Source of the DNA: Octopus sinensis
Lineage: Eukaryota
Assembly: GCF_006345805.1 (NCBI RefSeq)
Contig: NC_043023.1
Location: 14,508,001-14,572,000, forward strand
DNA: 64,000 bases
Direction of reading: 5' to 3'
In this document: one piece after another, positions 127 to 46,440 of the stretch
How the letters are laid out: the number at the start of each line of letters is the position of its first letter
Numbering within the stretch: the stretch's first letter is position 1
The notes under the pieces: generated by a model
What the model was told of the DNA's origin: nothing
Databases searched by the model: none
The model's input: only the letters and a program-made list of their open reading frames with translations
Program-made: the position numbers and the translations under genes

Positions 127-204
127 CTGGAGGGAGAGAGGGAAATGGTTTAGCTGTGTATAGAGAGTGGTGGTAGTGGTGGTGGTGGGGCACTGTATAG
201 CATG

Positions 205-700
205 GAGGGGTGATGGGTGAGGAAGGGGTGGGAAGGGGCGAGAAGGGGAGGGGTGAGGAAGGAGGAGGAGGGAAGAAGAAGCAAAAGAAGAAGAAGGAAG
301 AGGAGAATAATTGGAAGAAGAAGAAAAAGAAGAAGAAGAGGAGGAAGAAGAAGAAGAAGAAGAAGAGGAGGAGGAAGAAGAAGAAGAAGAAGAGGAGGAG
401 GAAGAAGAAGAAGAAGAGGAGGAAGAAGAAGAAGTAGAAAAAGAAGAAGATGAGGAAGAAGGAAGAGAGGAATAATTGGAAGAAGAAGAAGAAAAAGAAG
501 AAGAGGAGGAGAAGGAGGAAGAAGATGAGGAAGAGGGGAATAATTGAAGAAGAAGAAGAAGAAGAGGAGGAAGAAGAGGAGGAGAAGGAGAAGAAGTAGA
601 AAAAGAAGAAGAAGAAAAAGAAGAAGAGCAGGAGGAGGAAGAAGAAGAAGAAGAAGAAGTAGAAAAAGAAGAAGATGAGGAAGAAGAAGGAAGGAGAAGG
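205..700. repeat. (GAA/GGA)n purine-rich microsatellite
   Basis: Directly visible; source of spurious Lys/Arg and Leu-rich ORFs. Confidence 0.95.
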
Positions 701-734
701 AGAATGAAAGAATCCCCCAGAGCCCTATACGTAC

Positions 735-960
735 AGCATGTCTTCTCTCCTGTTCTTCTCGTGCTTTATCAAACTCCTCCTTGGTCGAACTGAGCAGCTG
801 TTGGTGTGCATTGTGCAGCTGTTGCTGCAGTCGGTCGATCTCTGCACGCTCTCGGCAAGACTGGGATGCCAGCCTCCTCTTCTCGTCTTCAATCTCGCTG
901 TACAAACGGCGGCGCTCGTTCTGGAAGGACTCCTCCTCTTGGTGGATTTGTTTCTCGTAT
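735..960 (-). CDS. CEP131: CEP131 coding exon 16: RYEKQIHQEEE...KAREEQERRHA
   Basis: caacag acceptor, gtacgt donor; 226 nt, phase 2 to 0; human RQRLYSEV...GREEQERRH. Confidence 0.95.
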
Positions 961-1039
961 CTGTTGAGGTCAGAGGTCAACGAGAGATTTAATTAATTAA
1001 TAATTAATTAATAACGACAAAGTTATTTTACTAAATAGG

Positions 1040-3548: not shown

Positions 3549-4690
3549 TTATTTCTTTATTGCCCACAAGGGGCTAAACATAGAGGGGACAAACAAGGAT
3601 AGACAAACGGATTAAGTCGATAAGATTGACCCCAGTGCGTAACTGGTACTTAATTTATCGACCCCGAAAGGATGAAAGGCAAAGTCGACCTCGGTGGAAT
3701 TTGAATTCAAAACATAACGGCAGACGAAATACCTATTTCTTTACTACCCACAAGGGGCTAAACACAGAGAGGACAAAGAAGGACAGACAAACGGATTAAG
3801 TCGATTACATTGACCCCAGTGCGTAACTGGTACTTAATTTATCAACCCCGAAAGGATGAAAGGCAAAGTCGACCTCGGTGGAATTTGAACTCAAAACATA
3901 ACGGCAGACGAAATACCTATTTCTTTACTACCCACAAGGGGCTAAACATAGAGGGGACAAACAAGGACAGACAAACGGATTAAGTCAATTACATTGACCC
4001 AGTGCATAACTGGTACTTAATTTATCAACCCCGAAAGGATGAAAGGCAAAGTCGACCTTGGCGGAATTTGAACTCAGAACGTAGCGGCAGATGAAATACC
4101 GCTAAGCATTTCACCCAGTGTGCTAACGTTTCTAATTTCTTTATTGCCCACAGAGGACTAAACATAGAGGGGACAAACAAGGACAGACAAAGGGATTAAG
4201 TCGATTAGATTGACCCCAGTGCGTAACTGGTACTCATTTAATCAACCACGAAAGGATAAAAAGCAAAGTTGACCGTGGCAGAATTTGAACTCAGAACGTA
4301 GCGGCAGACGAAATACCTATTTCTTTACTACCCACAAGTGGCCAAACACAGAGAGGACAAACAAGGACAGACAAACGGATTAAGTCGATTATATTGACCC
4401 CAGTGCATAACTGGTACTTATTTAATTGACCCCAAAAGGATGAAAGGCAAAGTCAACCACAGCGGAATTTGAACTCAGAACGTAGCGATTCATTTCGCCC
4501 GGCGTGCAAACAAGGACAGACAAACGGATTAAGTCGATTAGATTGACCCCAGTGCGTAACTGGTACTTATTTAATCAACCCCAAAAGGATAAAAAGCAAA
4601 GTTGACCTTGACGGAATTTGAACTCAGAACGTAACAGCAGATGAAATACTGCCAAGCATTTCACCCGGCATGTTAACATTTCTGCCATCT
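3549..4690 (-). mobile_element. SINE family B head-to-tail multimer (about 6 diverged units)
   Basis: About 190-bp units with GAGTTCAAATTCC box B and GCCTTTCATCCTTTCGGGGTCGAT central domain. Confidence 0.85.
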
Positions 4691-5434: not shown

Positions 5435-6990
5435 TACAACCAAGAGAATGCCCTCCATCAAGCATTTGCCATATTCTGAACGCCTTACTTCCCTGGGCAT
5501 GGACACATTGAAACTCCGACATCTGGCAGCTGACTTGGCAGACACCCATAAAATTATTAACCATCTTACAAACAATAACTCTGAGCACCTTTTCGAGAAG
5601 GCTGAGGGTGTCCTGGCATCACTTACCAAGTCCTTTGTGAGCCGCGCTCCAGCTATTTATCTGCGGCTTTATATAGCTATGGTGCGGCCTCACCCAGAAT
5701 TTGCATCACTGGTCTGGAACCCCTATCTTGCCCAGGATATTAATCGTCTGGAAGCCGTTCAGCAATGTGCAACCAAGAGAATACCCTCCATCAAGCATTT
5801 GCCATATTCTGAACGCCTTACTTCCCTGGGCATGGACACATTGAAACTCCGACATCTGGCAGCTGACTTGGCAGACACCCATAAAATTATTAACCATCTT
5901 ACAAACAATAACTCTGAGCACCTTTTCGAGAAGGCTGAGGGTGTCCTGGCATCACTTACCAAGTCCTTTGTGAGCCGCGCTCCAGCTATTTATCTGCGGC
6001 TTTATATAGCTATGGTGCGGCCCCACCCAGAATTTGCATCACTGGTCTGGAACCCCTATCTTGCCCAGGATATTAATCGTCTGGAAGCCGTTCAGCGACG
6101 TGCAAACAAGAGAATGCCCTCCATCAGGCATTTGCCATATTCTGAACGCCTTACTTCCCTGGACATGGACATATTGAAACTCCGACGTCTGGCAGCTGAC
6201 TTGGCAGACACTCTTTTACTTGTTTCAGTCATTTGACTGTGGCCATGCTGGAGCACCGCCTTTAATCGAGCAACTCAACCCCAGGACTTATTCTTTTGCA
6301 AGCCCAGTACTTATTCTATTGGTCTCTTTTGTCGAACCGCTAAGTGACGGGGACATAAACACACCAGCATCGGTTGTCAAGCAATGCTAGGGGGACAAAC
6401 ACACACATATATATATATACATATATCTACGACGGGCTTCTTTCAGTTTCCGTCTACCAAATCCACTCACAAGGCTTTGGTCGGCCCGAGGCTATAGTAG
6501 AAGACACTTGCCCAAGGTGCCACGCAGTGGGACTGAACCCGGAACCATGTGGTTGGTAAGCAAGCTACTTACCACACAGCCACTCCTGCGCCTATAAAAT
6601 TATTAACCATCTTACTAACAATAACTCTGAGCACCTTTTCAAACTCCACCTGTCTAACACCCGTGGACATATTTACAAAGTCAGAAAACAGCACAGCTCC
6701 CATGACTTCAGGAAACATTTTTTCATGCTAAGAGTTACTGAAGCATGGAACAAACTGCCAGCATCAGTTGTTAGTTGTCGGAGCACTGCATCCTTCAAAA
6801 CTTCCATGCTTCCTGAGATTCGCCAACACTACAACTGATTTTCTCCCCTCCATACACACGCAAGCATGTATCTGACTCATACACTGTTCACTTCCCAGAC
6901 ATTTGTACATTACTGCATATGCTTTATACGCACTTTTGACAAGTTGTGGTGCACCTGAGCACTGTATACAATAATTTCATTAATATTATA
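5435..6990 (+). mobile_element. 5'-truncated CR1/L2-type LINE 3' end, internally duplicated and split by a SINE A
   Basis: VRPHPEFASLVWNP...RLEAVQRRA.KR...YSERL...LRRLAADL RT C-terminal motif; 333-bp unit x2.4; resumes at 6593; tail CACCTGAGCACTGTA. Confidence 0.85.
6207..6592 (-). mobile_element. SINE family A inserted into the CR1 remnant
   Basis: LINE sequence GCAGACAC/ATAAAATTATT is interrupted and resumes. Confidence 0.85.
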
Positions 6991-7210: not shown

Positions 7211-8016
7211 CTTGTCTTCTTCTTGTATTAAGACAGCATTCACCCGAGGTGGATTGAGCTGGCTTCATTCATCCTCAATGCTGCATCTCTCACAAACGCC
7301 GAGCAGACCTAGTGATTTGAGGCTAACAACCGCGTGATCTCCAACCACTCCCTATTCCAGCGGTGAACGCTGTAGATATGGGGACCTAGGTTGGGTTCCA
7401 GATCAGCCTTGACCGTCATCAGCCAGGTTTTTTGTGATCCACCACATCGCTTTCACCAACCCTTGAAGGGGAGCTGGGGCAATTGCTTCGTAGGTTGGGT
7501 TCCAGATCAGCCTTGACCGTCATCAGCCAGGTTTTTCGTTGTCCACCACATCGCTTTCGCTAACCCTGAAGGGGAGCTGGGGCAATTGCTTCGTAGGTTG
7601 GGTTCCAGATCAGCCTTAACTGTCATCAGCCAGGTTTTTCGTTGTCCACCACATCACATTCGCCAACCCTGAAGGGGAGCTGGGGCAATTGCTTCGTAGG
7701 TTGGGTTCCAGATCAGCCTTGACTGTCATCAGCCAGGTTTTTCGTTGTCCACCACATCGCTTTTGCCAACCCTGAAGGGGAGCTGGGACAATTGCTTCGT
7801 AGGTTGGGTTCCATATCAGTCTTGACTGTCATCAGCCAGGTTTTTTGTGATCCACCACATCGCTTTCGCCAACCCTTGAAGGGGAGCTGGGGCAATTGCT
7901 TCGTAGGTTGGGTTCCAGATAAGCCTTGACTGTCATCAGCCAGGTTTTTCATTGTCCACCACATCGCTTTCGCCAACCCTGAAGGGGAGCTGGGGTAATT
8001 GTAATTGCTTTGTACG
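7211..8016 (-). mobile_element. 5'-truncated RTE-type LINE with six about 103-bp tandem units and TSD
   Basis: Minus translation GWRKRCGGQRKTWLMTVKADLEPNLGP..RWNREW...VRDA; TSD AACAGAAATAT at 7200-7210 and 8017-8027. Confidence 0.75.
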
Positions 8017-8289
8017 AACAGAAATATGGTAACAGAAGGGTTAAAGGGATCTAAACTAAAACCTTAAATTCAAAATTTCGTTTTGATTTATGTTCCAAAC
8101 TTTAGTGGAACATAATCCTTAGTGGATTATCCTGAGTTTACTCGTGCATCGCAAATGTATTTTTTTAGAATCAGACGAGTATACTCGGTCAAAATTAATT
8201 TTTAATTTTAGCACTTAAATGAGTTTGTTTTGTGTTGTTTCATTTTTGAGCAATCATGAATTTAGTCGCGTTGTCGTACGCCTGGCAGC

Positions 8290-8825
8290 ACATATTCTGG
8301 TGATAACAATGATAATGATGATGATGAAGATGATGATAACAACAATAAGGATGATGATGGTGATGATGGTGATAACAATGATGATGATGATGATGAAGAA
8401 AATGATGACGAAAACAATCATGATGATGAGGACAATGATAAGGATGATGATGATGACAACAACAACAACGAAGAAGAAGGAGGAGAAGAAGGAGGAGAAG
8501 AAGAAGAAGGAGAAGAAGGAGGAGAAGAAGAAGGAGGAGGAGGAGAAGAAGAAGAAAGAGAAGGAGAAGGAGAAGAAAGTGAAGAAGAAGAAGAAGAAAG
8601 AGAAGAAGAAAGAGAAGGAGAGGGAGAAGAAGGAGGTGAAGAAGGAGAGGGAGAAGAAGGAGGAGAAGAAGAAGAAGAAGAGAAGGAGAGGGAGAAGAAG
8701 AAGAAGAAGAAGAAGAACAACAACAACAACAACAAGAACAACAACGATGATGATGACAACAACACCAAGAAGAAGAAGAACAACAACAACAGCAACAAAG
8801 ACAACAATGACGACGACATCAACGG
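8290..8825. repeat. (GAT)/(GAA)/(CAA) trinucleotide mosaic
   Basis: Directly visible. Confidence 0.95.
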
Positions 8826-8865
8826 ATGATAACAAAGGTACTGAAATCTCCCCTCTGTTCCTCAC

Positions 8866-8972
8866 TTGTCCGTCTGATTCTTCATCTTGTCCTGATGCTT
8901 CCTGTCCATCGTTTTCAGCTCCTTCACCAACTGCTCACACTTTTCATTCAGCATCTTCTTGTCATCAATCAA
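8866..8972 (-). CDS. CEP131: CEP131 coding exon 13: LIDDKKMLNEKCEQLVKELKTMDRKHQDKMKNQTD
   Basis: ttttccag acceptor, gtgagg donor; 107 nt, phase 0 to 2; human LIEDKKVLSEKCE. Confidence 0.95.
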
Positions 8973-9044
8973 CTGGAAAAGAAACGAGACAACCATGACG
9001 CAATAGCTGAGACATATCTTACATTAAATCATGACATAGGCACA

Positions 9045-9210
9045 ATGGGAGTGGCTGTGTGGTAAGTAGCTTGCTTACCAACCACATGGTTCCGGGTTCA
9101 GTCCCACTGCGTGGCACCTTGGGCAAGTGTCTTCTGCTATAGCCCTGGGCCGACCAATGCCTTGTGAGTGGATTTGGTGGACAGAAACTGAAAGAAGCCC
9201 ATCGTATATA

Positions 9211-9262
<52 letters not shown>

Positions 9263-9428
9263 AGTGGCTGTGTGGTAAGTAGCTTGCTTACCAACCACAT
9301 GGTTCCGGGTTCAGTCCCACTGCGTGGCACCTTGGGCAAGTGTCTTCTGCTATAGCCCCAGGCCGACCAATGCCTTGTGAGTGGATTTGGTAGATGGAAA
9401 CTGAAAGAAGCCTGTTGTATGTGTGTGC

Positions 9429-9464
<36 letters not shown>

Positions 9465-9690
9465 GCATGTGTGTGTTTGTGTGACTGTGTTGTCCCCCTA
9501 GTATTGCTTGACAACCGATGCTGGTGTGTTTACGTCCTCGTCACTTAGCGGTTCGGCAAAAAAGGCCGATAGAATAAGTACTGGGCTTACAAAGAATAAG
9601 TGCCGGGGTTGATTTGCTCGACTAAAGGCGGTGCTCCAGCATGGCCGCAGTCAAATGATTGAAACAAGTAAAAGAGTAAAAAAGAGAAAA
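9045..9690 (+). mobile_element. SINE family A (two heads plus tail)
   Basis: Matches 1040-1800. Confidence 0.85.
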
Positions 9691-9697
9691 AGAGAGA

Positions 9698-10200
9698 TAC
9701 CGTAAATCCCTGAGTATAGTCCGCCCTTGAGTATAATATGCAGGGGATTTTTAGGGGGCTGTACCTCTGAAAAACCTAAACCTTGTGTATAATACGCACC
9801 CCTTCTCTAACTTGAGTTGTGCGTAATTAAGCCAGCAGCACTTAGTCGAACAAACACTTCCATGCATGTGTAATACAATAATGGTGATGTTCTTAACTGT
9901 TATATGGGAATGTAAATATGTTTGCAAATTGTTTTTGTTATATGTTATTCTGTGTTCTGAATACTTTTATTTTAATAAATGTTGCTTACTGCAAGTTATG
10001 GATGATTCTTTTATGACTTCATTGCTTTCAGGCTTAGCTTAAGGGATTTTCGCGCCCGACATCACAAAATGCGTCTGAATAAACATTGCCAGACAAACAA
10101 ATAGAGACTCGGACATTGCTTAGAAAATAATTTTCATTTTTTAACCTCATATATAATACGCACTAGGGATTTTGACCGTTAATTTTTGGGGAAAAATGCG
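9698..10200 (+). mobile_element. Non-autonomous Tc1/mariner-pogo-like DNA element (one end)
   Basis: Starts TACCGTAAATCCCTGAGTATAGTCCGC with recurring TATAATACGCAC subterminal motifs; right end cut by a SINE A (10200-10570). Confidence 0.4.
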
Positions 10201-12735: not shown

Positions 12736-13190
12736 TATATGTGGCAATTATTCGGTAGCCACGATAAAACTCCGAGTTTTATCATGCATAGTGGTATTTT
12801 GTCTGCCGTTATGTTCAGAGTTCAAATTCCGCTGAGATCAACTTTGCCTTTCATCCTTTCGGGGTCGATTAAATAAGTACCAGTTATGCACTGGGGTCGA
12901 TGTAATCGACTTAATCCCTTTGTCTGTCCTTGTCTATGTTTAGTCCCTTGTGTGCAATAAAGAAAAAAGAAACTCTTATATTTTTTTAACCTAAATTTTG
13001 ACAAAAAAGGGTTCCTTACACACATTAAAATACGGTATATGTAATTCAAAATATCGCCAATAACAAACTATAAAATAAATTTTTTAGTTTTCAAAATGAA
13101 ACAAAGATGTTACCAGTGAGTGATGGCTAGTTTTTTGTTTTTGTTTTAGTTGACAAGTTTACCAATAGCAGAGACAAAGGAACTACTAAC

Positions 13191-13376
13191 CAGGGCCTTC
13201 TGAAGAAGTTCCACTGACTGCTTCTTCTCGTCAAGCTCCAGACGCTGGGACATCACGTTGTTGGTAATCTCGGCAGCTGTGGCTGTGGCTTCTTCTAGAT
13301 TAAGGGCCTTTATAGGGGTCACCGAGCTGATATTGGTGTCATTTACCTCGTTACCGGAAGTCACAGAATAGGCCTT
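13191..13376 (-). CDS. CEP131: CEP131 coding exon 11: KAYSVTSG...SQRLELDEKKQSVELLQKAL
   Basis: tttcag acceptor, gttagt donor; 186 nt, phase 0/0; human RLKLEVEEKKQAMLLLQRAL. Confidence 0.93.
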
Positions 13377-13549
13377 CTGAAAAGAAGAATAAAATATCAT
13401 CATCATCGCATCATCATGATTAAACGTCCATTGTTCATGCTGGCATGTGCTGGATAGTTTAACCAGGGCTGTAAGCTAAAGAGCTGCACCAGATTCCAGT
13501 CTGACGCTTTGGCATGGTTTCTATGGCTACATGCCCTTCCTAATGCTAA

Positions 13550-13828
13550 CCACTTGCCCAAGATGCCACGCAGTGGAACTGAACCCGGAACCATGTGGTT
13601 GGTTAGCAAGCTACTTACCACACAGCCACTCCTGCGCCTATGTATATATATATATATATATATACAATGGGCTTCTTTTCAGTTTCCCTCTACCAAATCC
13701 ACTCACAAGGCTTTGGTCAGCCCGAGGCTATAGCAGAAGACACTTGCCCAAGATGCCACGCAGTGGGACTGAACTCGGAACCATGTGGTTGGTTAGCAAG
13801 CTACTTACCACACAGCCACTCCTGCGCC

Positions 13829-13873
<45 letters not shown>

Positions 13874-14025
13874 GATGGGCTTCTTTTCAGTTTCCCTCTA
13901 CCAAATCCACTCACAAGGCTTTGGTCAGCCCGAGGCTATAGCAGAAGACACTTGCCCAAGATGCCACGCAGTGGGACTGAACCCGGGACCATGTGGTTGG
14001 TTAGCAAGCTACTTACCACACAGCC
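13550..14025 (-). mobile_element. SINE family A, three tandem heads
   Basis: Three copies separated by (TA)n. Confidence 0.8.
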
Positions 14026-14076
14026 TTGCACCCCAGTATCACTTTGATGGCATGTGCTGCTCTCTTGGTCAATAAT

Positions 14077-14454
14077 GTGGAAGCACTCCGTCGGTTACGA
14101 CGATGAGGGTTCCGAATCAACAGAACAGCCTGCTCGTGAAATTAACGTGTAAGTGGCTGAGCACTCCACAGACACGTGCACCCTTAACGTAGTTCTCGGG
14201 GATATTCAGCATGACACAGAGAGTGACAAGGCCGGCCCCTTGAAATACAGGTACAACAGAAACAGGAAGTAAGAGTGAGAGAAAGTTGTGGTGAAAGAGT
14301 ACAGCAGGGATCACCACCATCCCCTGCCAGAGCCTCGTGGAGCTTTTAGGTGTTTTCGCTCAATAAACACTCACAACGCCCGGTCTGGGAATCGAAACTG
14401 CGATCCTATGACCGCGAGTCCACTGCCCTAACCACTGGGCCATTGCGCCTCCAC
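14077..14454 (-). mobile_element. SINE family D
   Basis: Reverse complement of 2974-3360; GGTCAATAAT on both sides (candidate TSD). Confidence 0.85.
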
Positions 14455-14492
14455 TCGGTCAATAATAATAACGATAACGGTGTTCTACTTAC

Positions 14493-14761
14493 TAATTCGA
14501 TGTCAGTGATTCGGTCAGCTGATTGGACTTCATCCAGAAATGAAATGATGCTCTGTAGTTTGTCGTTTGAGAGATAACCGATGCCATCATCGGGAGGGGA
14601 CAAGGGATGCTGGTCCTGATTCAGCTGTTGTAGGTTCTCAGCAGTTAAGTGGGGGCTTGTTTTTGGAGTGGCCCCTTCTTTGGTTGCACAGCGGGATCTA
14701 GATGAGCATCGACTCTTGTTGGAACCGCCACCAACTTTCAGGGATCCATTTAAATCAGAAA
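14493..14761 (-). CDS. CEP131: CEP131 coding exon 10: VSDLNG...LTAENLQQ...KLQSIISFLDEVQ...DIEL
   Basis: tttttcag acceptor, gtaagt donor; 269 nt, phase 1 to 0; matches human LTADNL and KLQSIMSFLDE. Confidence 0.93.
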
Positions 14762-14911
14762 CTGAAAAACAAAAAACAAACAGCCATCATATAAATATTA
14801 TTAAGGTTGACTTTGCCTTTCATCCTTTCGGGGTTGATAAATTAAGCACCAGTGAAACATTGAGGTTCATGTAATCAGCTAGTCCCCTCCACCAAAATTT
14901 CAGGCCTTGTG

Positions 14912-15043
14912 CCCTAACCTAACCCTAACCTAACCATAACCCTAACCCTAACCTAACCATAACCCTAACCCTAACCATAACCTAACCCTAACCCTAACCA
15001 TAACCCTAACCCTAACCTAACCCTAACCCAACCCTAACCCTAA
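14912..15043. repeat. Interstitial telomere-like array (CCCTAA with CCTAA and CCATAA variants)
   Basis: About 132 bp, directly visible. Confidence 0.9.
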
Positions 15044-15045
15044 AA

Positions 15046-15310
15046 TGGGGGCTTGTTTTTGGAGTGGCCCCTTCTTTGTTTGCACAGCGGGACCTAGATG
15101 AGCATCGACTCATGTTGGAACTGCTACCAACTTTCAGGGATCCATTTAAATCAGAAACTGAAAAACAAAAAAACAAACAGCCATCATATAAATATTATTA
15201 AGGTCAACTTTGCCCTTCGTCCTTTTGGGCTCAGTAAATTAAGCACCAGTGAAACATTGGGGTTCATGTAATCAGCTAGTCCCCTCCACCAAAATTTCAG
15301 GCCTTGTGCC
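15046..15310 (-). pseudogene. Partial duplicate of CEP131 coding exon 10 (acceptor plus first 112 nt) and adjacent intron
   Basis: Diverged direct repeat of 14650-14913. Confidence 0.85.
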
Positions 15311-15574
15311 TTTAATAAAAAGGATCGCCTGGCCCCTGTGCCGGTGGCATGTAAAAAGCACCATCCGTCCGTGGCCGTTTGCCAGCCCCGTCTGGCACCT
15401 GTGCGGGTGGCACGTAAAAAGCACCCACTACACTCATGGAGTGGTTGGCGTTAGGAAGGGCATCCAGCCGTAGAAACACTGCCAGATCAGACTGGGCCTG
15501 ATGCAGTCTTCTGGCTTCACAGACCCCAGTTGAACCGTCCAACCCCTGCTAGCATGGAAAACGGACGCTAAATG

Positions 15575-16290
15575 ATGATGATGATGATTATTATTATTAT
15601 ATTATTATTATTATTATTATTGAGTGAGAGAGCAGTGCATGCCATCAAAGTGACACTGGAGTACAAATATACAAAGCCCAGTATACCCATCATGACTACC
15701 CGTCTGATAAGGGTACACTAGGCACATGCATCACAACCATATGTGCGCGACATGGTGATCTCATATCAAGACAAACGGCACATGACCTTGCAGGTGGGGC
15801 CCAGTTAGAATTTTCTTCTGGTCGAGTTGCCCATCCTGCTCAAAAGGTCCCTGAATAAGGGTTGTTTAAGGATGTTGAATGAAACATCCATGTTTCCAGA
15901 GGTGAATTATCCAAACCCCAAAGAATCCCTCTCAACACATGGCTATGATGCTCCCCCACTACTTCTGCTCATGATCAGACATGCACATATCTATTTCGTT
16001 ACTACCCACAAGGGGCTAAATACAGAGAGGACAAACAAGGACAGACAAAAGGATTAAGTCGATTACATCGACCCCCAGTGCGTAACTGGTACTTAATTTA
16101 TCGACCCCGAAAGGATGAAAGGCAAAGTCGACCTGGGCGGAATTTGAACTCAGAACGTAGCGACAGACAAAATACTGCTGCTACGTCAGCCACTAAAGGA
16201 CATGCTCAACTGGTTACGGTCAAACAACTGACAAGCAAATCTGTGGTATTGAGCAGAATATATCTTTTATACCAAGACAAAACAATGCAT
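15575..16290 (-). mobile_element. Unclassified (AAT)n-tailed dispersed repeat (family F) with nested SINE B at about 15985-16180
   Basis: Reverse complement of 34800-35390. Confidence 0.7.
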
Positions 16291-16414
16291 GTATATGAAT
16301 GCAAATGTGAAGGCATGTGAAGGCATGTATGTGTGCAGGTGTGGTCAAGTGGATATGCATGTGTCTGTATATATCTGAGCACCTGTGCACCTCTGTATGT
16401 GCATGCATGTGCTC

Positions 16415-16815
16415 TTTTACTCTTTTACTTGTTTCAGTCATGTGACTGTGGCCATGCTGGAGCACCGCCTTTAGTCGAGCAAACTGACCCCAGGACTTAT
16501 CCTCTGTAAGCCTAGTACTTATTCTATAGGTTTTTTGCCAAACTGCTAAGTTACAGGGATGTAAACACACCAGCATCGGTTGTCAAGCGATGTTGGGGGG
16601 ACAAACAGACACACAAACACACACACACATATATATAAACACACATATATACGACAGGCTTCTTTCAGTTTCCGTCTACCAAATCCACTCACAAGGCTTT
16701 GGTCAGCCCGAGGCTATAGTAGAAGACACTTACCCAAGGTGCCACACAGTGGGACCGAACCCAGAACCATGTGGTTCATAAGCAAGCTACTTAGCACACA
16801 GCCACTCCTACTCCT
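16415..16815 (-). mobile_element. SINE family A
   Basis: Full tail and head. Confidence 0.85.
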
Positions 16816-16964
16816 ATGCCTACATAGTCTTTTGTGCTGTGTTATTGTAGAGATAACTTGACCAAGCTGCAGCACAGGGGGATTGAACACAAAACCAGAA
16901 GGCTGCAAAGTAAATTTCTTAACCACATAATTGAAGTACATGAAACGAAGTGAGACACACTTAC

Positions 16965-17226
16965 CCCTGGATGTGCTTTTGAGTGGCAAGTCACCTGCCC
17001 CGATATCCTCATCTTCCTCCAGTTTCTTTAGTGTTTCAAGGAGGTCACTCAAAGTACTTTTGGTTGGAGTCTTTGATGCCCTAGCATCAGAGTTGATGAT
17101 GGGGGGTTCAAAACCTGGCTCTGGTGTGTTCCGATCTGGGGTCGGCAGTTGGGAGATTGGCACCGAAGATGTGTGAGAGTTCCTTCGAAGGGTTGAGTTT
17201 GCGACTTTGACCAGCTTGGAGGTTTC
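16965..17226 (-). CDS. CEP131: CEP131 coding exon 9: ETSKLVKV...STLSDLLETLKKLEEDE...KSTSR
   Basis: cacccag acceptor, gtaagt donor; 262 nt, phase 0 to 1; matches human LEELLHTLQLLEKE. Confidence 0.92.
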
Positions 17227-17319
17227 CTGGGTGAAGCAAAAAGGGACGAAACAATAAATAATGTTGTAGAGAATCAGGTGATGGTAGGGGGTGGGAAAGA
17301 CTAATGATTCTGGGGGTGA

Positions 17320-17657
17320 GAAGAAATCGACCCCAGGACTTTGTAAGCCTAGTACTTATTTTATTGGTCTCTTTTGCCGAACCGCTTAAGTTACAGGGAT
17401 GTAAACACACCAGCATCGGTTGTCAAGCGATGTTGGGGGTACAAACACAGACACACAAACATATATATATATATATATATAGATATATATACACATATAT
17501 ACGATGGGCTTCTTTCAGCTCCCATCTACCAAATCCACTCACAAGGCTTTGGCCGGCCCGAGGTCTATAGTAGAAGACACTTGCCCAAGGTGCCGTGCAG
17601 TGGGACTGAACCCGGAACCATGTGGTTGGTAAGCAAGCTACTTACCACACAGTCACT

Positions 17658-17701
<44 letters not shown>

Positions 17702-17860
17702 TATATACGATGGGCTTCTTTCAGTTTCCGTCCACCAAATCCACTCACAAGGTTTTGGTTGGTCCAAGGCTATAGTAGGTGACACTTGCCCAAGGTGCCA
17801 CGTAGTGGGACTGAACTCAGAATCATGTGGTTTGTAAGCAAGCTACTTACCACACAGCCC
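17320..17860 (-). mobile_element. SINE family A (two heads)
   Basis: Matches family A. Confidence 0.8.
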
Positions 17861-18224
17861 ATCTGCTCAGCATCATCTGGTTAGGCATCTTACTCAGACC
17901 AATGTAACTCTCCCAATCCAGATGTCCTGATCAAGCAATAAGGCATTATTCTCTGGCTTTAGCTTTAGTCTTTTGCTAACTGAAATCTCTCATCTATGCA
18001 TGCTTTGCTATAACCAAAATAGTTGAACCTGGCCATTGACAATTTGCCGTGTGTTCATCCACTCAGCATCTAAATTCATTTGATGGAATAGCTCACATCC
18101 CCAGATGTCCCAACTGGGTGATGAGGTATGAATGTCTGGCCCCAGTTTTAGTTACACAGGTCTTTCAGTAACTGAAATATCTCATCTGCACACATCAAAA
18201 CTACATATGATAGCAGTATTTCGT

Positions 18225-18655
18225 TAACTGCGGAGAGCTGGTAGAAACGTTAGCACGTCGGGCGAAATGCTTAGCGGTATTTTGTCTGCTGTTACGTTGT
18301 GAGTCCAAATTCCGCCAAGACCGACTTTACCTTTCATCCTTTCGGGGTCGATAAATTAAGTACCAGTTAGGCACTGGAGTCGATGTAATCGACTTAATAC
18401 CAATGTCTGTCCTTGTTTGTTCCCTCTGTGTTTAGCCCCTTGTGGGTAATAAAGAAATAGGTATTTCGTCTACCGTTACGTTCTGAGTTCAAATTCCGCC
18501 GAGGTCGACTTTACCTTTCATCCTTTCGGGGTTGATAAATTAAGTACCAGTTACGCACTGGGGTCGATATAATCGACTTAATCCGTTTGTCTGTCCTTGT
18601 TTGTTCCCTCTGTGTTTAGCCCCTTGTGGGTAGTAAAGAAATAGGTATTTCATTA
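18225..18655 (+). mobile_element. SINE family B dimer
   Basis: Junction AAAGAAATAGGTATTTCGTC. Confidence 0.85.
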
Positions 18656-18664
18656 ACTGCACTG

Positions 18665-21600
18665 GTTAATCCTGACCATCGACAGCTTTTTGTCTGTTCA
18701 TCCACTCAGCCTCATCTGGTCTGGCATCTTAACCCAAACAGATGTAACTCTTCCACAACCAGATGTCCTGATCAAGCAACACAGCATGAACATCTGGCTT
18801 GAACTTTAGTTACATTGATCTTTCACTTACTGAAATCTCTCTTCTCCACACACCATGACTACAGATGAAAGCAGTAGTTTCCTAACAGAACTGGCTGATC
18901 TTGGCCATTGACACTTTATTATCTGTTCATCCCCTCAGCCTCATCTGGTCAGGTATCTTAACCCAGACAGATGTAACTCTTCCACAACCAGATGTCCTGA
19001 TCAAGCAACACAGCATGGACATCTGGCTTGTACTTTAGTTACATTGATCTTTCACTTACAGAAATCTCTCTTCTCCACACACCATGACTACAGATGAAAG
19101 CAGTAATTTCCTAACAGAACTGGCTGATCTTGGCCATTGACACTTTTATCTGTTCATCCCCTCAGCCTCATCTGGTCAGGCATCTTAACCCAGACAGATG
19201 TAACTCTTCCACAACCAGATGTCCTGATCAAGCAACACAGCATGGACATCTGGCTTGTACTTTAGTTACATTGATCTTTCACTTACAGAATCTCTCTTCT
19301 CCACACACCATGACTACAGATGAAAGCAGTAGTTTCCTAACAGAACTGGCTGATCTTGCCATTGACACTTTATTATCTGTTCATCCACTCAGCCTCATTT
19401 GGTCAGGCATCTTACCCAGACAGATGTAACTCTTCCACAACCAGATGTCTGATCAAGCAACACAGCATGGACATCTGGCTTGTACTTAGTTACATTGATC
19501 TTTCCCTTACAGAAATCTCTCTTCTCCACACACCATGACTACAGATGAAAGCAGTAGTAGTTTCCTAACAGAACTGGCTGATCTTGGCCATTGACACTTA
19601 TTATCTGTTCATCCACTCAGCCTCATTGGTCAGGCATCTTAACCCAGACAGATGTAACTCTTCCACAACCAGATGTCCTGATCAAGCAACACAGCATGAA
19701 CATCTGGCTTGTACTTTAGTTACATTGATCTTTCACTTACAGAAATCTCTCTTCTCCACACATCATGACTACAGATGAAAGCAGTAGTAGTTTCTAACAG
19801 AACTGGCTGATCTTGGCCATGACACTTTATTAGTTCATCCCCTCAGCCTCATCTGGTCAGGCATCTTAACCCAGACAGATGTAACTCTTCCACAACCAGA
19901 TGTCTGATCAAGCAACACAGCATGAACATCTGGCTTGTACTTTAGTTACATTGATCTTTCACTTACAGAAATCTCTCTTCTCCACACATCATGACTACAG
20001 ATGAAAGCAGTAATTTCCTAACAGAACTGGCTGATCTTGGCCATTGACACTTTATTATCTGTTCATCCCCTCAGCCTCATCTGGTCAGGCATCTTAACCC
20101 AGACAGATGTAACTCTTCCACAACCAGATGTCCTGATCAAGCAACACAGCATGGACATCTGGCTTGTACTTTAGTTACATTGATCTTTCACTTACAGAAA
20201 TCTCTCTTCTCCACACACCATGACTACAGATGAAAGCAGTAGTTTCCTAACAGAACTGGCTGATCTTGGCCATTGACACTTTATTATCTGTTCATCCACT
20301 CAGCCTCATCTGGTCAGGCATCTTAACCCAGACAGATGTAACTCTTCCACAACCAGATGTCCTGATCAAGCAACACAGCATGGACATCTGGCTTGTACTT
20401 TAGTTACATTGATCTTTCACTTACAGAAATCTCTCTTCTCCACACACCATGACTACAGATGAAAGCAGTAATTTCCTAACAGAACTGGCTGATCTTGGCC
20501 ATTGACACTTTATTATCTGTTCATCCCCTCAGCCTCATCTGGTCAGGCATCTTAACCCAGACAGATGTAACTCTTCCACAACCAGATGTCCTGATCAAGC
20601 AACACAGCATGAACATCTGGCTTGTACTTTAGTTACATTGATCTTTCCCTTACAGAAATCTCTCTTCTCCACACACCATGACTACAGATGAAAGCAGTAG
20701 TTTCCTAACAGAACTGGCTGATCTTGGCCATTGACACTTTATTATCTGTTCATCCACTCAGCCTCATTTGGTCAGGCATCTTAACCCAGACAGATGTAAC
20801 TCTTCCACAACCAGATGTCCTGATCAAGCAACACAGCATGAACATCTGGCTTGTACTTTAGTTACATTGATCTTTCACTTACAGAAATCTCTCTTCTCCA
20901 CACATCATGACTACAGATGAAAGCAGTAGTTTCCTAACAGAACTGGCTGATCTTGGCCATTGACACTTTATTATCTGTTCATCCCCTCAGCCTCATCTGG
21001 TCAGGCATCTTAACCCAGACAGATGTAACTCTTCCACAACCAGATGTCCTGATCAAGCAACACACAGCATGACATCTGGCTTGTACTTTAGTTACATTGA
21101 TCTTTCACTTACAGAAATCTCTCTTCTCCACACACCATGACTACAGATGAAAGCAGTAGTTTCCTAACAGAACTGGCTGATCTTGGCCACTGACACTTTA
21201 TTATCTGTTCATCCACTCAGCCTCATCTGGTCAGGCATCTTAACCCAAACAGATGTAACTCTTCCACAACCAGATGTCCTGATCAAGCAACACAGCATGA
21301 ACATCTGGCTTGAACTTTAGTTACATTGATCTTTCACTTACAGAAATCTCTCTTCTCCACACACCATGACTACAGATGAAAGCAGTATTTCCTAACAGAA
21401 CTGGCTGATCTTGGCCACTGACACTTTATTATCTGTTCATCCACTCAGCCTCATCTGGTCAGGCATCTTAACCCAAACAGATGTAACTCTTCCACAACCA
21501 GATGTCCTGATCAAGCAACACACAGCATGAACATCTGGCTTGAACTTTAGTTACATTGATCTTTCACTTACAGAAATCTCTCTTCTCCACACACCATGAC

Positions 21601-22140
21601 TACAGATGAAAGCAGTAGTTTCCTAACAGAACTGGCTGATCTTGGCCACTGACACTTTATTATCTGTTCATCCACTCAGCCTCATCTGGTCAGGCATCTT
21701 AACCCAAACAGATGTAACTCTTCCACAACCAGATGTCCTGATCAAGCAACACAGCATGAACATCTGGCTTGAACTTTAGTTACATTGATCTTTCACTTAC
21801 TGAAATCTCTCTTCTCCACACACCATGACTACAGATGAAAGCAGTAGTTTCCTAACAGAACTGGCTGATCTTGGCCACTGACACTTTATTATCTGTTCAT
21901 CCACTCAGCCTCATCTGGTCAGGCATCTTAACCCAAACAGATGTAACTCTTCCACAACCAGATGTCCTGATCAAGCAACACAGCATGAACATCTGGCTTG
22001 CACTTTAGTTACATTGATCTTTCACTTACAGAAATCTCTCTTCTCCACACACCATGACTACAGATGAAAGCAGTAGTTTCCTAACAGAACTGGCTGATCT
22101 TGGCCATTGACACTTTATTGTCTGTTCGTCCACTCAGCAT
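18665..22140. repeat. 229-bp tandem satellite, about 15 homogeneous copies
   Basis: TGGCCATTGACAC at 18902, 19131, 20038, 20267 etc.; diverged copies at 17866-18200, 22985-23200, 23760-24020. Confidence 0.95.
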
Positions 22141-22975: not shown

Positions 22976-23204
22976 TCACAACTACCAATGCTTGCAATAG
23001 TTCACTAAGTAAACTGGTTGATTCTGGCCATTGACACTGGTCAGGCATCTTACTCAGACCAATTCAACTCTCCCAATCCAGATGTCTTGATCATGTGATG
23101 CAGAATGAACATCTGGTTTGAGTTTTAATCACATTGGTCTTTTACTAACTGAAATATTTCATTTGTACATGCCACATCTACAGATGATAACAGTATTTCA
23201 AGGA

Positions 23205-23750
23205 TATACAAAGTGATTAAGTCGATTACATCAACCCCAGTGCGTAACTGGTACTTAATTTATCGACCCCGAAAGGATGAAAAGCAAAGTCGACCTCGGC
23301 GGAATTTGAACTCAGAACGTAACAGTAGACGAAATACCTATTTCTTTATTACCCACAAGGGGCTAAACACAGGGGGAACAAACAAGGACAGACATAGGTA
23401 TTAAGTCGATTACATCGACCCCAGTTCGTAACTGGTACTTAATTTATCAACCCCGAAAGGATGAAAAGCAAAGTTGACCACGGCGGAATTTGAACTCAGA
23501 ACGTAACAGTAGACGAAATACCTATTTCTTTACTACCCACAAGGGGCTAAACACAGAGGGGACAAACAAGGACAGACAAACGGATAAAGTCGATTATATC
23601 GACCCCAGAGCGTGACTGGTACTTGTTTAATCAACTCCGAAAGGATGAAAGGTAAAGTCGACCTCGGCAGAATTTGAACTGAGAATGTAGCGGCAGGCGA
23701 AATACCGCTAAGCATTTCGCCCGGTGTGCTAACGTTTCTGCCAGCTCACC
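23205..23750 (-). mobile_element. SINE family B trimer
   Basis: GACGAAATACCTATTTCTTTA junctions. Confidence 0.85.
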
Positions 23751-30989: not shown

Positions 30990-31760
30990 CCTATTTCTTT
31001 ACTGCCCACATAGAGAGGACAAACAAGGACAGACAAAGGGATTAAGTCGATTATATTGACCCCAGTGCGTAACTGGTAGTTAATTTATCGACCCCAAAGG
31101 GATGAAAGGCAAATTCGACCTCGGCGGAATTTGAACTCAGAACAATAGCGGCAGACGAAATACCTTTTTCTTTACTACCCACAAGGGGCTAAACATAAAG
31201 GGGACAAACAAGGACAGACAAAGAGATTAAGTCAATTATATTGACCCCAGTGCATAACTGGTACTTAATTTATCGACCCCGAAGGGATGAAAGGCAAATT
31301 CGACCTCGACGGAATTTGAACTCAGAACGTAGCGGCAGACGAAATACCTATTTCTTTACTACCCACAAGGGGGTAAACATAGAGAGGACAAACAAGGACA
31401 GACAAAAAGATTAAGTCGATTATATTGACCCCAGTGTGTAACTGGCAATTATTTTATCAACCCCGAAAGGATGAAAGGCAATGTTGACCTCGGCGGAATT
31501 TGAACTCAGAACATAGCGGCAGACGAAATACCTATTTCATTACTACCCACAAGGGGGTAAACATAGAGAGGATAAACAAGGACAGACAAAGGGATTAAGT
31601 CGATTATATTGACCCCAATGCGTAACTGGTACTTAATTTATCGACCCCGAAGGAATGAAAGGCAAATTCGACCTCGGCAGAATTTGAACTCAGAACGTAG
31701 CGGCAAATGTAATACCGCTAAGCATTTCACCCAGCATGCTAACGTTTCTGCCAGCTCGCA
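30990..31760 (-). mobile_element. SINE family B tetramer
   Basis: Four units, same junction. Confidence 0.87.
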
Positions 31761-41896: not shown

Positions 41897-42069
41897 CCTT
41901 AGATCATAGGGCGACCGGCTGTGCTTGATGAGACCTACTGAGTCAAGTACATCAACATCAAAATAAACATCAAGTGGAAATTGTAGTTGTGATACCTGTG
42001 CCGGTGGCACATAAAAAGCACCATCCGAACGTGGCCGATGCCAGTGCCACCTCGACTGGCTTCCATGCT

Positions 42070-45000: not shown

Positions 45001-46440
45001 CAACCGATCATGGCTGGTGGCATGTTAAAAAGCACCATCCGAACGTGCCGATGCCAGCACAGCCTTGACTGGCATCCGTGCCGGTGGCATATAAAAAGCA
45101 CCAACCGATCATGGCTGGTGGCATGTAAAAAGCACCATCCGAACGTGGCCGATGCCAGCACAGCCTTGACTGGCATCCGTGCCGGTGGCCATATAAAAAG
45201 CACCAACCGATCATGGCTGGGGCATGTAAAAAGCACCATCCGAACGTGGCCGATGCCAGCACAGCCTTGACTGGCATCCGTGCCGGTGGCATATAAAAAG
45301 CACCAACCGATCATGGCTGGTGGCATGTAAAAAGCACCATCCGAACGTGGCCGATGCCAGCACAGCCTTGACTGGCATCCGTGCCGGCATTAAAAAAGCA
45401 CCAACGATCATGGCTGGTGGCATGGCATATAAAAGCACCATCCGAACCGATGGCCGATGCCCCAGCCTTGCCTGGCATCCGTGCCTGGCATATAAAAAGC
45501 ACCACCCCGATTGGCTGGTGCTGGGGGGTGTAAAAAGCCCATCCGAACGTGGCCGATGCCAGCACAGCATTGACTGGCATCCGTGCCGGTGGCATATAAA
45601 AAGCACCACAAACCGATCATGGCTGGTGGCATGTAAAAAGCACCATCCGAACGTGGCCGATGCCAGCACAGCCTGACTGGCATCCGTGCCGGTGGCATAT
45701 AAAAAGCACCAACCGATCATGGCTGGTGGCATGTAAAAAGCACCATCCGAACGTGGCCGATGCCAGCACAGCTTGACTGGCATCCGTTGCCGGTGGCATA
45801 TAAAAAGCACCAACCGATCATGGCTGGTGGCATGTAAAAAAGCACCATCCGAACGGGCCGATGCCAGCACAGCCTTGACTGGCATCCGTGCCGGTGGCAT
45901 ATAAAAAGCACCAACCGATCATGGCTGGTGGCATGTAAAAAGCACCATCCGAACGTGGCCGATGCCAGCACAGCCTTGACTGGCATCCGTGCCGGTGGCA
46001 TATAAAAAGCACCAACGATCATGGCTGGTGGCATGTAAAAAGCACCATCCGAACGTGGCCGATGCCAGCACAGCCTTGACTGGCATCCGTGCCGGTGGCA
46101 TATAAAAAGCACCAACCGATCATGGCTGGTGGCATGTAAAAAGCACCATCCGAACGTGGCGATGCCAGCACAGCCTTGACTGGCATCCGTGCCGGTGGCA
46201 TATAAAAAGCACCAACCGATCATGGCTGGTGGCATGTAAAAAAGCACCATCCGAACGTGGCCGATGCCAGCACAGCCTTGACTGGCATCCGTGCCGGTGG
46301 CATATAAAAAGCACCAACCGATCATGGCTGGTGGCATGTAAAAAGCACCATCCGAACGTGGCCGATGCCAGCACAGCCTTGACTGGCATCCATGCCGGTG
46401 GCATATAAAAAGCACCAACCGTTCATGGCTGGTGGCATGT
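42070..46440. repeat. 101-bp tandem satellite, about 43 copies
   Basis: GGTGGCATATAAAAAGC at 42171, 42272 etc.; source of all ORFs between 41792 and 46418. Confidence 0.95.

What the first reader, a model, noticed from the sequence alone, without database searches (positions are those of the whole stretch)
14650..15310. Telomere-repeat insertion joins a partial duplication of a CEP131 coding exon, creating a second splice acceptor
Structure: 264-bp copy (14650-14913), 132 bp of mixed TTAGGG/TTAGG/TTATGG repeats, then a diverged copy (15046-15310) holding the intact acceptor (15158-59) and first 112 nt of exon 10. The scattered substitutions argue against assembly error. It resembles a double-strand-break repair scar with telomeric filler. 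If the upstream acceptor is used, the frame runs ...KTSPHFRVRVGLGLG-stop (poison exon). A TTAGG variant also offers a phase-1 AG|GTTAGG donor just before that stop, which could yield an in-frame cassette exon of about 46 codons ending in telomeric DNA; the gene already uses a GTTAGT donor at 13190.
Basis: partly seen in the sequence, partly recalled or inferred. Interest (0 to 1): 0.8.

Follow-up and report, generated by a model that had tools for sequence, protein, structure and literature searches.

The report
Telomere-repeat scar duplicating a CEP131 exon start
In this octopus genome an old chromosome break inside the CEP131 gene was repaired with 23 telomere-type repeats and a 267-base duplication that copied an exon's splice acceptor; this kind of repair scar is known from mammals, and nothing shows that the extra acceptor is used.

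Summary
Window 14647-14913 (copy A) and 15043-15310 (copy B) are direct repeats, 93.7% identical. Between them lie 23 telomere-type units: 13 TTAGGG, 5 TTAGG, 4 TTATGG, 1 TTGGG, with the G-strand on the gene's sense (minus) strand. It is the only such array in the 64 kb.

The gene is CEP131/AZI1. Each copy carries the same polypyrimidine tract, the CAG acceptor and the first 112-115 nt of the exon at 14761..14493.

The orthologous Octopus bimaculoides locus has one copy and no telomeric repeat, so it is an empty site. Argonauta hians and a more distant cephalopod also have a single exon. With O. bimaculoides as outgroup the two copies changed independently: 7 A-derived and 7 B-derived changes, interleaved. 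That rules out an assembly error and rules out a loss in O. bimaculoides.

The flanks of the two copies are as a tandem duplication with filler predicts, and the A-side junction shares GG. The closest known kind is the short interstitial telomeric sequence inserted at a double-strand break with target-site duplication, described in primates, rodents and horse. This case differs in three ways: a very long duplication, a variant-rich periodic array, and a position inside a coding exon.

Use of the acceptor is untested. Interest is moderate to low.

The parts
14647..14913 (-). Copy A of the duplicated unit (267 nt). It holds a SINE-like intron fragment, the polypyrimidine tract, the acceptor and the first 115 nt of the functional exon. 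Its downstream flank is the ancestral rest of the exon; its upstream flank is the telomeric array.
14912..15043 (-). Interstitial telomeric array of 23 units (13 TTAGGG, 5 TTAGG, 4 TTATGG, 1 TTGGG) with the G-strand on the gene's sense strand. It shows a 23-nt higher-order pattern, TTAGGG TTAGGG TTATGG TTAGG. Its end bases overlap ancestral bases: GG at 14912-14913 and T at 15043. The net filler is 14914-15042.
15043..15310 (-). Copy B of the duplicated unit (268 nt). Its upstream flank is ancestral and collinear with O. bimaculoides; its downstream flank is the telomeric array.
14493..14761 (-). It enters in phase 1 and leaves in phase 0, with acceptor AG at 14763-14762 and donor TTA|GTAAGT. 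It encodes VSDLNGSLKVGGGSNKS...YLSNDKLQSIISFLDEVQSADRITDIEL.
   Evidence: conserved in O. bimaculoides at 92% and in P0001
15046..15157 (-). Pseudo-exon: the duplicated first 112 nt of the exon, behind an intact duplicate acceptor (AG at 15159-15158).
15017..15157 (-). Hypothetical in-frame cassette of 141 nt (47 codons) if the donor-like TTAG|GTTAGG (GT at 15016-15015) were used. The site matches the CAG|GTAAGT consensus at 6 of 9 positions, against 6-7 of 9 for the gene's real donors.
   Evidence: use not shown
15012..15014 (-). First in-frame stop (TAG), inside the telomeric array, if acceptor B is used and no donor in the array is used.
15021..15040 (-). The one canonical G-quadruplex motif (GGGTTAGGGTTGGGTTAGGG), on the sense (non-template) strand. 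The sense RNA of the array also carries 12 UAGGG[A/U] motifs.
16965..17163 (-). 3' part of the preceding CEP131 exon. The donor is GGG|GTAAGT after 16965, phase 1.
   Evidence: 95% identical protein in O. bimaculoides
13191..13376 (-). Next CEP131 exon, with donor CTG|GTTAGT. This shows that a +3 T donor is used in this gene.
14789..14913 (+). Fragment of a dispersed SINE-like family, with 35 other copies in the window. In copy B and in O. bimaculoides the homologous fragment continues past the duplication edge, so the edge lies inside the element.
15326..15612 (+). Lineage-specific SINE-like insertion (TE2), absent from the O. bimaculoides site. It lies 15 bp from the upstream edge of the duplication and is not part of the duplicated unit.

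Best explanation
This is an interstitial telomeric sequence laid down during repair of a chromosome break in the germ line. The event happened on the lineage leading to this octopus, after it separated from Octopus bimaculoides.

The ancestral locus read U-X-D: upstream intron, then a 267-nt stretch X running from inside a SINE-like fragment to 115 nt into the exon, then the rest of the exon. It now reads U-X(B)-(TTAGGG-like)23-X(A)-D.

Most likely course (inferred). The break had long complementary single-stranded ends, or was a one-ended break at a collapsed fork. The sense-strand 3' end stopped at ...CCCCCATTT, where the ancestral sequence continued AACTG. Telomerase, or a polymerase copying a telomeric template, extended that end with G-strand repeats. 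The overhangs were filled in. The extended end was then joined through a GG microhomology to the end that began at GGCACAAGG. Because both ends still carried X, the join made a tandem duplication with telomeric filler.

The array was variant-rich from the start or was later reshaped by slippage of a 23-nt block. Both copies have since drifted about 3% each.

Consequences. One strong duplicate 3' splice site now sits 396 nt upstream of the real one. A TERRA-like UUAGGG tract now sits in the sense pre-mRNA. I expect normal CEP131 mRNA to be made from acceptor A and copy B to be mostly skipped, or to give a minor transcript with a premature stop. That expectation is inference only.
For: Shown:
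- The direct repeat and the array are present.
- The gene is CEP131. The top hit is 'centrosomal protein of 131 kDa-like [Octopus bimaculoides]' at 94% identity, with CEP131_CC and CEP131_C domains.
- In O. bimaculoides locus L006 one stretch (5985-6442) matches both copy B (5985-6256) and copy A (6004-6442). It lies in gap-free sequence, and the 26 kb holds no telomeric repeat.
- Argonauta hians (L007) and a more distant cephalopod (L001) have one exon and no array.
- Copy B keeps the ancestral upstream flank and copy A keeps the ancestral downstream flank.
- There are 7 A-derived and 7 B-derived changes and 2 sites where all three differ. They are interleaved along the unit, which fits independent drift and not a recombinant deletion.
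- Junctions: ancestral CATTT|AACTG became CATTT|TAGGG, and the last unit shares GG with the start of copy A.
- TTAGGG is the telomere motif found by FISH in an octopus (Adachi 2014, as cited in PMC13218726 and PMC6160780).

From the literature:
- Telomeric repeats are inserted at double-strand breaks. Flanking direct duplication occurs in 4.5-16% of loci and is attributed to staggered breaks. [quoted passage not shown]
- Fill-in by the CST complex and Pol alpha-primase at complementary 3' overhangs makes tandem duplications (PMC8355091).
Against: - Only one assembly of this species was available. No reads and no second individual could be examined.
- A 267-nt stagger is very long for a target-site duplication. 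I did not check the sizes reported in the mammalian papers, so a one-ended break with re-invasion behind the break may fit better.
- Only 1 nt (T) is in register with the repeat at the B junction in an ungapped comparison. It would be TTA only if a later 1-nt change in the T run is assumed.
- Ten of 23 units are variants of just three kinds in a periodic pattern (P about 5e-5 under independent single hits). About 4 changes are expected from the drift seen in the flanks. A plain telomerase product that decayed at random does not explain this.
- Polarisation by the SINE-family consensus disagrees with the O. bimaculoides outgroup at some sites, two of them at a decayed CpG. Individual assignments are therefore uncertain, although both methods show changes in both copies.
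Confidence: 0.85

Rival explanations
1. The event is the same break-repair and duplication, but telomerase did not make the filler de novo. It was copied from an existing variant-rich telomeric or subtelomeric array, or reverse-transcribed from telomeric RNA. The route would be template switching (microhomology-mediated break-induced replication) or target-primed reverse transcription from the plus-strand 3' end ...GTGCC at 14913.
For: The array has recurrent TTAGG and TTATGG variants in a 23-nt higher-order pattern, which independent decay does not explain. Either junction could have served as the primer end. Templated insertions at breaks are a described class (PMC5110952, listed; abstract only). 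The ancestral break sequence TTT|AA resembles an L1-type endonuclease site; this last point rests on my own knowledge and was not tested.
Against: No donor array is known. Later slippage of a mutated 23-nt block explains the pattern equally well. In the mammalian cases telomerase is the favoured source (PMC2246262).
Confidence: 0.25
2. Assembly artefact: a false tandem duplication or a haplotype join, with telomere-like sequence placed between the copies.
For: Only one assembly was seen. Tandem repeats and simple arrays are error-prone regions.
Against: The copies differ at 15 sites plus an indel (5.6%). The changes are split evenly between the copies relative to an outgroup. Each copy keeps exactly one ancestral flank. 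The array is degenerate and ordered, not a pure terminal repeat.
Confidence: 0.03
3. The array is the internal part of a transposable element (a MITE or a telomere-associated retroelement) that inserted here.
For: The locus is packed with SINE-like repeats, and part of the unit (14789-14913) belongs to a dispersed family.
Against: The flanks are direct copies of the local ancestral sequence, exon included, and not element termini. The duplication edge lies inside the SINE-like fragment. None of the 35 family copies in the window carries telomeric repeats, and there is no other array in the 64 kb. The inverted-repeat search found no pair of arms bracketing the array.
Confidence: 0.03
4. The duplication with the array is ancestral to both octopus lineages and was deleted in O. 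bimaculoides by recombination between the two copies.
For: Direct repeats 396 bp apart can recombine. The estimated age of the duplication is close to the species split.
Against: A recombinant single copy would be B-like at its 5' end and A-like at its 3' end. Instead the O. bimaculoides states switch between B-like and A-like eight times along the unit. Argonauta and a distant cephalopod also lack the duplication and the array.
Confidence: 0.03

Closest known systems
Short interstitial telomeric sequences inserted during double-strand-break repair (Nergadze et al. 2004, 2007; Santagostino et al. 2020: primates, rodents, horse), subclass with target-site duplication
   Same: It is a short, one-orientation array of the species' own telomere motif at an internal unique site. 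A related species has an empty orthologous site. A direct duplication of the sequence flanking the break is present, a class reported at 4.5-16% of loci and attributed to staggered breaks. There is microhomology at the junctions.
   Different: The host is a cephalopod mollusc. I found no such locus-level case for cephalopods in the searched papers, but that search was not exhaustive. The duplication is 267 nt. The array is variant-rich (10 of 23 units) with a 23-nt higher-order pattern, not near-perfect hexamers. The break lay inside a coding exon of a conserved gene, and the repair duplicated a splice acceptor.
Small tandem duplications from fill-in of complementary 3' overhangs by the CST complex and Pol alpha-primase, followed by end joining (Schimmel et al. 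2021, PMC8355091)
   Same: The result is a tandem duplication bounded by the two nick positions. A 3' overhang is also the substrate telomerase needs, and CST is the telomeric C-strand fill-in factor (and general knowledge).
   Different: Those duplications are small and carry no telomeric filler. No enzyme dependence can be tested from sequence.
Neotelomere formation and telomere-spanning junctions at breaks (for example 'Neotelomere formation by human telomerase', bioRxiv 10.1101/2022.10.31.514589)
   Same: Telomerase adds repeats to a non-telomeric 3' end at a break (abstract).
   Different: Here the repeat-capped end was rejoined to the same locus. The result is a germ-line, apparently fixed internal scar, not a new chromosome end.
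Pseudo-exons, poison exons and decoy splice sites created by intragenic duplication
   Same: An intact duplicate 3' splice site lies upstream of the real one. There is a premature stop if it is used, and a possible weak donor downstream.
   Different: No transcript evidence exists. The tract downstream of the pseudo-exon is a run of UAGGG[A/U], the SELEX motif of the splicing repressor hnRNP A1 (PMC3794818). That predicts repression rather than use. The prediction comes from vertebrate work and was not tested in cephalopods.

Membership tests
Short ITS inserted at a double-strand break | Internal array of the species' own telomeric motif, in one orientation | tested here: met
   There are 23 units, all with the G-strand on the minus strand. 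TTAGGG is the octopus telomere motif by FISH, as cited in PMC13218726 and PMC6160780. The telomere of this particular species was not examined.
Short ITS inserted at a double-strand break | Empty orthologous site in a related species, with collinear flanks | tested here: met
   O. bimaculoides L006 5985-6442 is a single copy, has no array and has collinear flanks. Argonauta and L001 also lack the array.
Short ITS inserted at a double-strand break | Flank change of a described type (none, deletion, addition or direct duplication) | tested here: met
   There is a direct duplication of 267/268 nt, and each copy keeps one ancestral flank. The type is described in PMC7215372 and PMC2246262. The size here is unusually large.
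Short ITS inserted at a double-strand break | [quoted passage not shown] | tested here: inconclusive
   Ancestral CATTT|AACTG compares with CATTT|TAGGG. One nt (T) is in register without gaps. It would be TTA only if a later T-run indel is assumed. GG is shared at the other junction.
Short ITS inserted at a double-strand break | Near-perfect hexamers, as expected of a telomerase product (my own recollection of how the mammalian short class is described; not checked in the papers read) | tested here: not met
   Ten of 23 units are variants of three kinds in a 23-nt period. This lowers the claim 'plain telomerase product'. It does not lower the claim 'telomeric filler at a break'.
Fusion-type or subtelomeric-type ITS | Head-to-head arrays, or flanking subtelomeric repeats | tested here: not met
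   The array has a single orientation. The flanks are the gene's own intron and exon.
Transposable element (MITE or similar) carrying an internal telomere-like array | Several copies with the same array and termini; terminal repeats; its own short target-site duplication | tested here: not met
   There is one array in 64 kb. The 35 SINE-family copies lack it. The flanks are direct copies of the ancestral local sequence. A genome-wide test was not possible.
CEP131/AZI1 gene | Homology to named CEP131 proteins and to the CEP131 Pfam domains | tested here: met
   Seventy-nine hits include 'centrosomal protein of 131 kDa-like [Octopus bimaculoides]' (94% identity) and many '5-azacytidine-induced protein 1', with PF27681 and PF27695 on the hits. 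A weak IQ-motif match is present in the upstream exon.
Alternative cassette or poison exon | Spliced transcripts that use acceptor 15157 | not testable with these tools
   No transcript or read data for this species could be reached. Only the sequence potential was shown.

The most novel reading that the evidence does not exclude
The duplicated acceptor is used in some tissue or stage together with the TTAG|GTTAGG site at 15017. CEP131 would then gain an in-frame 47-codon cassette. The cassette would repeat the first 37 residues of the exon in diverged form, and its last nine codons and its splice donor would be telomeric-repeat DNA.
Probability: 0.07. Interest if true: 0.6.

Novelty: new member of a known kind. 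Interest (0 to 1): 0.35.

Why it matters
It is a clean natural record, with an empty site for comparison, that telomeric repeats are used as filler in germ-line break repair outside vertebrates. The target duplication is long enough to copy a functional splice site of a conserved centrosome and cilium gene.

It also offers a natural test. Does a run of UUAGGG in a pre-mRNA silence an otherwise perfect decoy acceptor, or does the cell tolerate a poison or cassette exon? If only the structural part holds, it is one more interstitial telomeric sequence of a known kind.

Tried and rejected
- Same-species or sister-species evidence. A protein search with the exon 9-11 peptide found only two ORFs from a distant cephalopod. 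Exact look-ups of two window ORFs, including the one spanning the copy-B/array junction, found nothing. Two metagenome scans, one for the junction and one for a 40-mer conserved between the window and O. bimaculoides, found nothing. No second individual, no closer species and no transcripts could be examined.
- Pfam on the window's exons gave only weak matches such as IQ. Gene identity came from named homologues instead.
- Asymmetric, error-prone synthesis of one copy. This was suggested by copy A's higher identity to the SINE family. It was rejected because the outgroup gives 7 versus 7 changes and the family consensus gives about 3 versus 7, which is not significant.
- Conservation of the duplicate acceptor. 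The 80-nt stretch without substitutions around the acceptor has P = 0.06, and P = 0.5 if the indel is counted. This is not evidence for selection or gene conversion.
- MITE or other transposon origin, assembly error, and loss in O. bimaculoides were all rejected (see the rival explanations).
- A tRNA scan of 13000-18000 found no tRNA gene.

Full report
**1. What is in the sequence**

Window 14647-14913 (copy A) and 15043-15310 (copy B) are direct repeats. They are 93.7% identical over 268 columns. They differ by 15 substitutions (12 transitions, 3 transversions) and one 1-nt indel, giving K2P 0.059.

Between them lies a telomere-type array. Read on the minus strand it has 23 units: 13 TTAGGG, 5 TTAGG, 4 TTATGG and 1 TTGGG. 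A telomeric 14-mer with up to one mismatch occurs 13 times in the window, 12 of them here. Chance expectation is 0.03.

**2. The gene**

The minus strand carries CEP131/AZI1. A query made of four exon translations returned 79 hits. The top hit was 'centrosomal protein of 131 kDa-like [Octopus bimaculoides]' at 94% identity. Many others were named '5-azacytidine-induced protein 1', and the hits carry the CEP131_CC and CEP131_C domains.

- The preceding exon ends at 16965 (GGG|GTAAGT, phase 1).
- The exon in question is 14761..14493 (269 nt; acceptor TTTTTCAG|, donor TTA|GTAAGT).
- The next exon is 13376..13191, with donor CTG|GTTAGT.
- That last donor is confirmed by the O. bimaculoides protein P0003, which reads ...LQKAL|NQQREL....
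- The C-terminal half of the exon (YLSNDKLQSIISFLDEVQSADR) is conserved in a distant cephalopod (P0001) and in Argonauta.
- I did not verify the label 'exon 10'.
- At 94% protein identity and about 90% intron identity to O. bimaculoides, the window comes from a related but different octopus.

**3. The empty site**

The O. bimaculoides orthologue (L006; GCA_001194135.2, CM046629.1) is collinear with the window around this exon.

- Window 17265-16833 matches L006 4581-5014.
- Window 15897-15613 matches L006 5702-5986.
- Copy B with its upstream flank (15325-15043) and copy A with the rest of the exon (14909-14461) both match one stretch, L006 5985-6256 and 6004-6442.
- That stretch lies in gap-free sequence between N runs at 4278-4287 and 7233-9988.
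- L006 has no telomeric repeat anywhere.
- Argonauta hians (L007) and a more distant cephalopod (L001) also have one exon and no array.

The three-way alignment shows that copy B keeps the ancestral upstream flank and copy A keeps the ancestral downstream flank. A tandem duplication with filler predicts exactly that.

**4. Real and old, not an artefact**

With O. bimaculoides as outgroup, 7 differences are A-derived and 7 are B-derived. At 2 sites all three sequences differ. Nine substitutions and three indels are shared by both copies against the outgroup.

The A-derived and B-derived sites are interleaved along the unit. O. bimaculoides is therefore not a B-5'/A-3' recombinant left by a deletion.

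The SINE-family consensus gives a similar picture, roughly 3 A-derived versus 7 B-derived. It disagrees with the outgroup at some sites, two of them at a decayed CpG, so single-site assignments are uncertain.

About 8/264 changes per copy after the event, against 9/264 on the rest of the path to O. bimaculoides, put the event close to the species split. The counts are small and the error is wide; this is my estimate.

Assembly errors do not produce copies that are 5.6% diverged, changed symmetrically against an outgroup, and each attached to one ancestral flank.

**5. Junctions and mechanism**

In gene sense the ancestral sequence at the break was ...AAGCCCCCATTT|AACTG... (O. bimaculoides, and copy A apart from one T>C change). 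Copy B reads ...AAGCCCCCATTT|TAGGGTTAGGG... That leaves one base (T) in register with the repeat. It would be TTA if a later change in the T run is assumed.

At the other end the array reads ...TTAGGTTAGG|GCACAAGG. Its last GG is shared with the ancestral AAGG|CACAAGG.

The G-strand continues from the 3' end of copy B on the sense strand. This is the polarity expected if that 3' end was extended with telomeric repeats.

Two routes fit:
- A break with long complementary single-stranded ends, with extension of one 3' end, fill-in and end joining. Fill-in by the CST complex and Pol alpha-primase at such ends is known to make tandem duplications (PMC8355091).
- A one-ended break whose extended end re-annealed 267 nt behind the break and resumed synthesis.

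I cannot separate these from sequence.

**6. The array is not a randomly decayed perfect repeat**

At the flanks' drift, about 4 changes are expected in 132 nt. Instead 10 units are variants, of only three kinds. They are arranged as TTAGGG TTAGGG TTATGG TTAGG blocks; TRF gives 90% matches at period 23 against 84% at period 6.

Under independent single hits, three or fewer variant kinds among ten variant units has P about 5e-5. So the variants were either present at birth (a templated or stuttering origin) or were spread by slippage of a 23-nt block.

**7. Not a transposon feature**

Positions 14789-14913 belong to a dispersed SINE-like family with 35 other copies in the window. None of those copies carries telomeric repeats. 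In copy B and in O. bimaculoides the fragment continues beyond the duplication edge. The exon part of the unit is unique in the window. The flanks of the array are direct copies of local sequence, and the inverted-repeat search found no pair of arms bracketing the array.

**8. Splicing**

The two acceptors are identical over 40 nt apart from T7 (B) versus T6 (A) in the polypyrimidine tract.

- From exon 9 in phase 1, acceptor B gives VSDLNGSLKVGSSSNMSRCSSRSRCANKEGATPKTSPHFRVRVGLGLG-stop, with TAG at 15014-15012.
- The site TTAG|GTTAGG with last exon base 15017 matches the donor consensus at 6 of 9 positions, like the gene's own donors at 6-7 of 9. It would give a 141-nt in-frame cassette.
- The three B-derived changes in the pseudo-exon are all non-synonymous (G>S, G>S, R>M). 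This gives no sign of coding constraint, but the numbers are tiny.
- The substitution-free 80 nt around the acceptor is not significant (P = 0.06).
- The sense RNA of the array carries 12 UAGGG[A/U] motifs and one G-quadruplex motif.
- UAGGGA/U is the SELEX motif of hnRNP A1, a splicing repressor that also binds telomeric repeats (PMC3794818).

By inference from vertebrate work I expect the pseudo-exon to be mostly repressed. No transcript data could be reached.

**9. Comparison with what is known**

The closest known kind is the short interstitial telomeric sequence inserted at a double-strand break. It was documented in primates, rodents and horse by the same empty-site logic.

In those studies the flank was unchanged, deleted, added to, or directly duplicated. 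Duplication occurred at 4.5% of horse loci, 4.6% of rodent loci and 16% of primate loci. It was attributed to staggered breaks. Bases in register with the repeat were often found at the break (PMC7215372, PMC2246262).

This locus meets the tests of array, empty site and flank duplication. The in-register test is inconclusive. It fails a near-perfect-hexamer expectation, a criterion I took from memory and did not check in the papers.

It differs in host (a cephalopod), in the 267-nt duplication, in the periodic variant array, and in lying inside a coding exon so that a splice acceptor was copied. I file it as a new member of a known kind.

**10. Limits**

There is one assembly of this species, no reads and no closer relative. 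The protein collection and the metagenome scans returned nothing from this species or a closer relative than O. bimaculoides. The mechanism steps are inferred from junction anatomy and the literature. The splicing outcome is open.

Noticed in passing
window 15326-15612: A SINE-like element with an (ATG)n(ATT)n tail is absent from the O. bimaculoides orthologous site (L006 5985/5986). Its 5' end lies only 15 bp from the upstream edge of the duplication (15310). Whether its insertion and the break are linked is unknown.
   Followed up: partly
window 42003-46450: There is a 101-bp satellite of about 44 copies at 93% identity. It is built from the GGTGGCATGTAAAAAGCACC module that also occurs twice in the element at 15326-15425 and in many dispersed copies.
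   Followed up: no
window 18654-22138: There is a 229-bp tandem array of about 15 copies at 96% identity, inside a CEP131 intron.
   Followed up: no
window 3550-4633, 23199-23706, 31008-31716, 48208-48582, 50049-51528: The SINE-like core that contributes 14804-14876 to the duplicated unit mostly occurs as short tandem arrays with a 184-191-bp period, not as single insertions.
   Followed up: partly
L006 7233-9988 (O. bimaculoides): An N gap inside CEP131 coincides with the public annotation splitting the gene into a 432-aa model and a 313-aa model. P0003 starts at a methionine inside the exon that corresponds to window 13376-13191.
   Followed up: partly
L007 about 1100-1571 (Argonauta hians): The orthologous exon in Argonauta appears to extend much further upstream as open reading frame, with a repetitive Gly-rich N-terminal part (acceptor not mapped). 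Only the C-terminal YLSxDKLxSIISFLDEVQSADR block is conserved across cephalopods, so the duplicated N-terminal part of the exon is the fast-evolving part.
   Followed up: no
window 13639-14025: There is a 208-bp tandem duplication (1.9 copies, 97% identity) of a SINE with a (TA)n head, in the intron just downstream of the exon. It is another recent local duplication in the same gene.
   Followed up: no
window 150-980 minus strand: The ORF that holds a C-terminal CEP131 exon (…EEQERRHAV) runs on into a long low-complexity Leu/Pro/Phe tract made of GAA-rich simple repeat (272-704). The O. bimaculoides model P0003 ends in a similar tract, so that model probably reads through a donor site.
   Followed up: no
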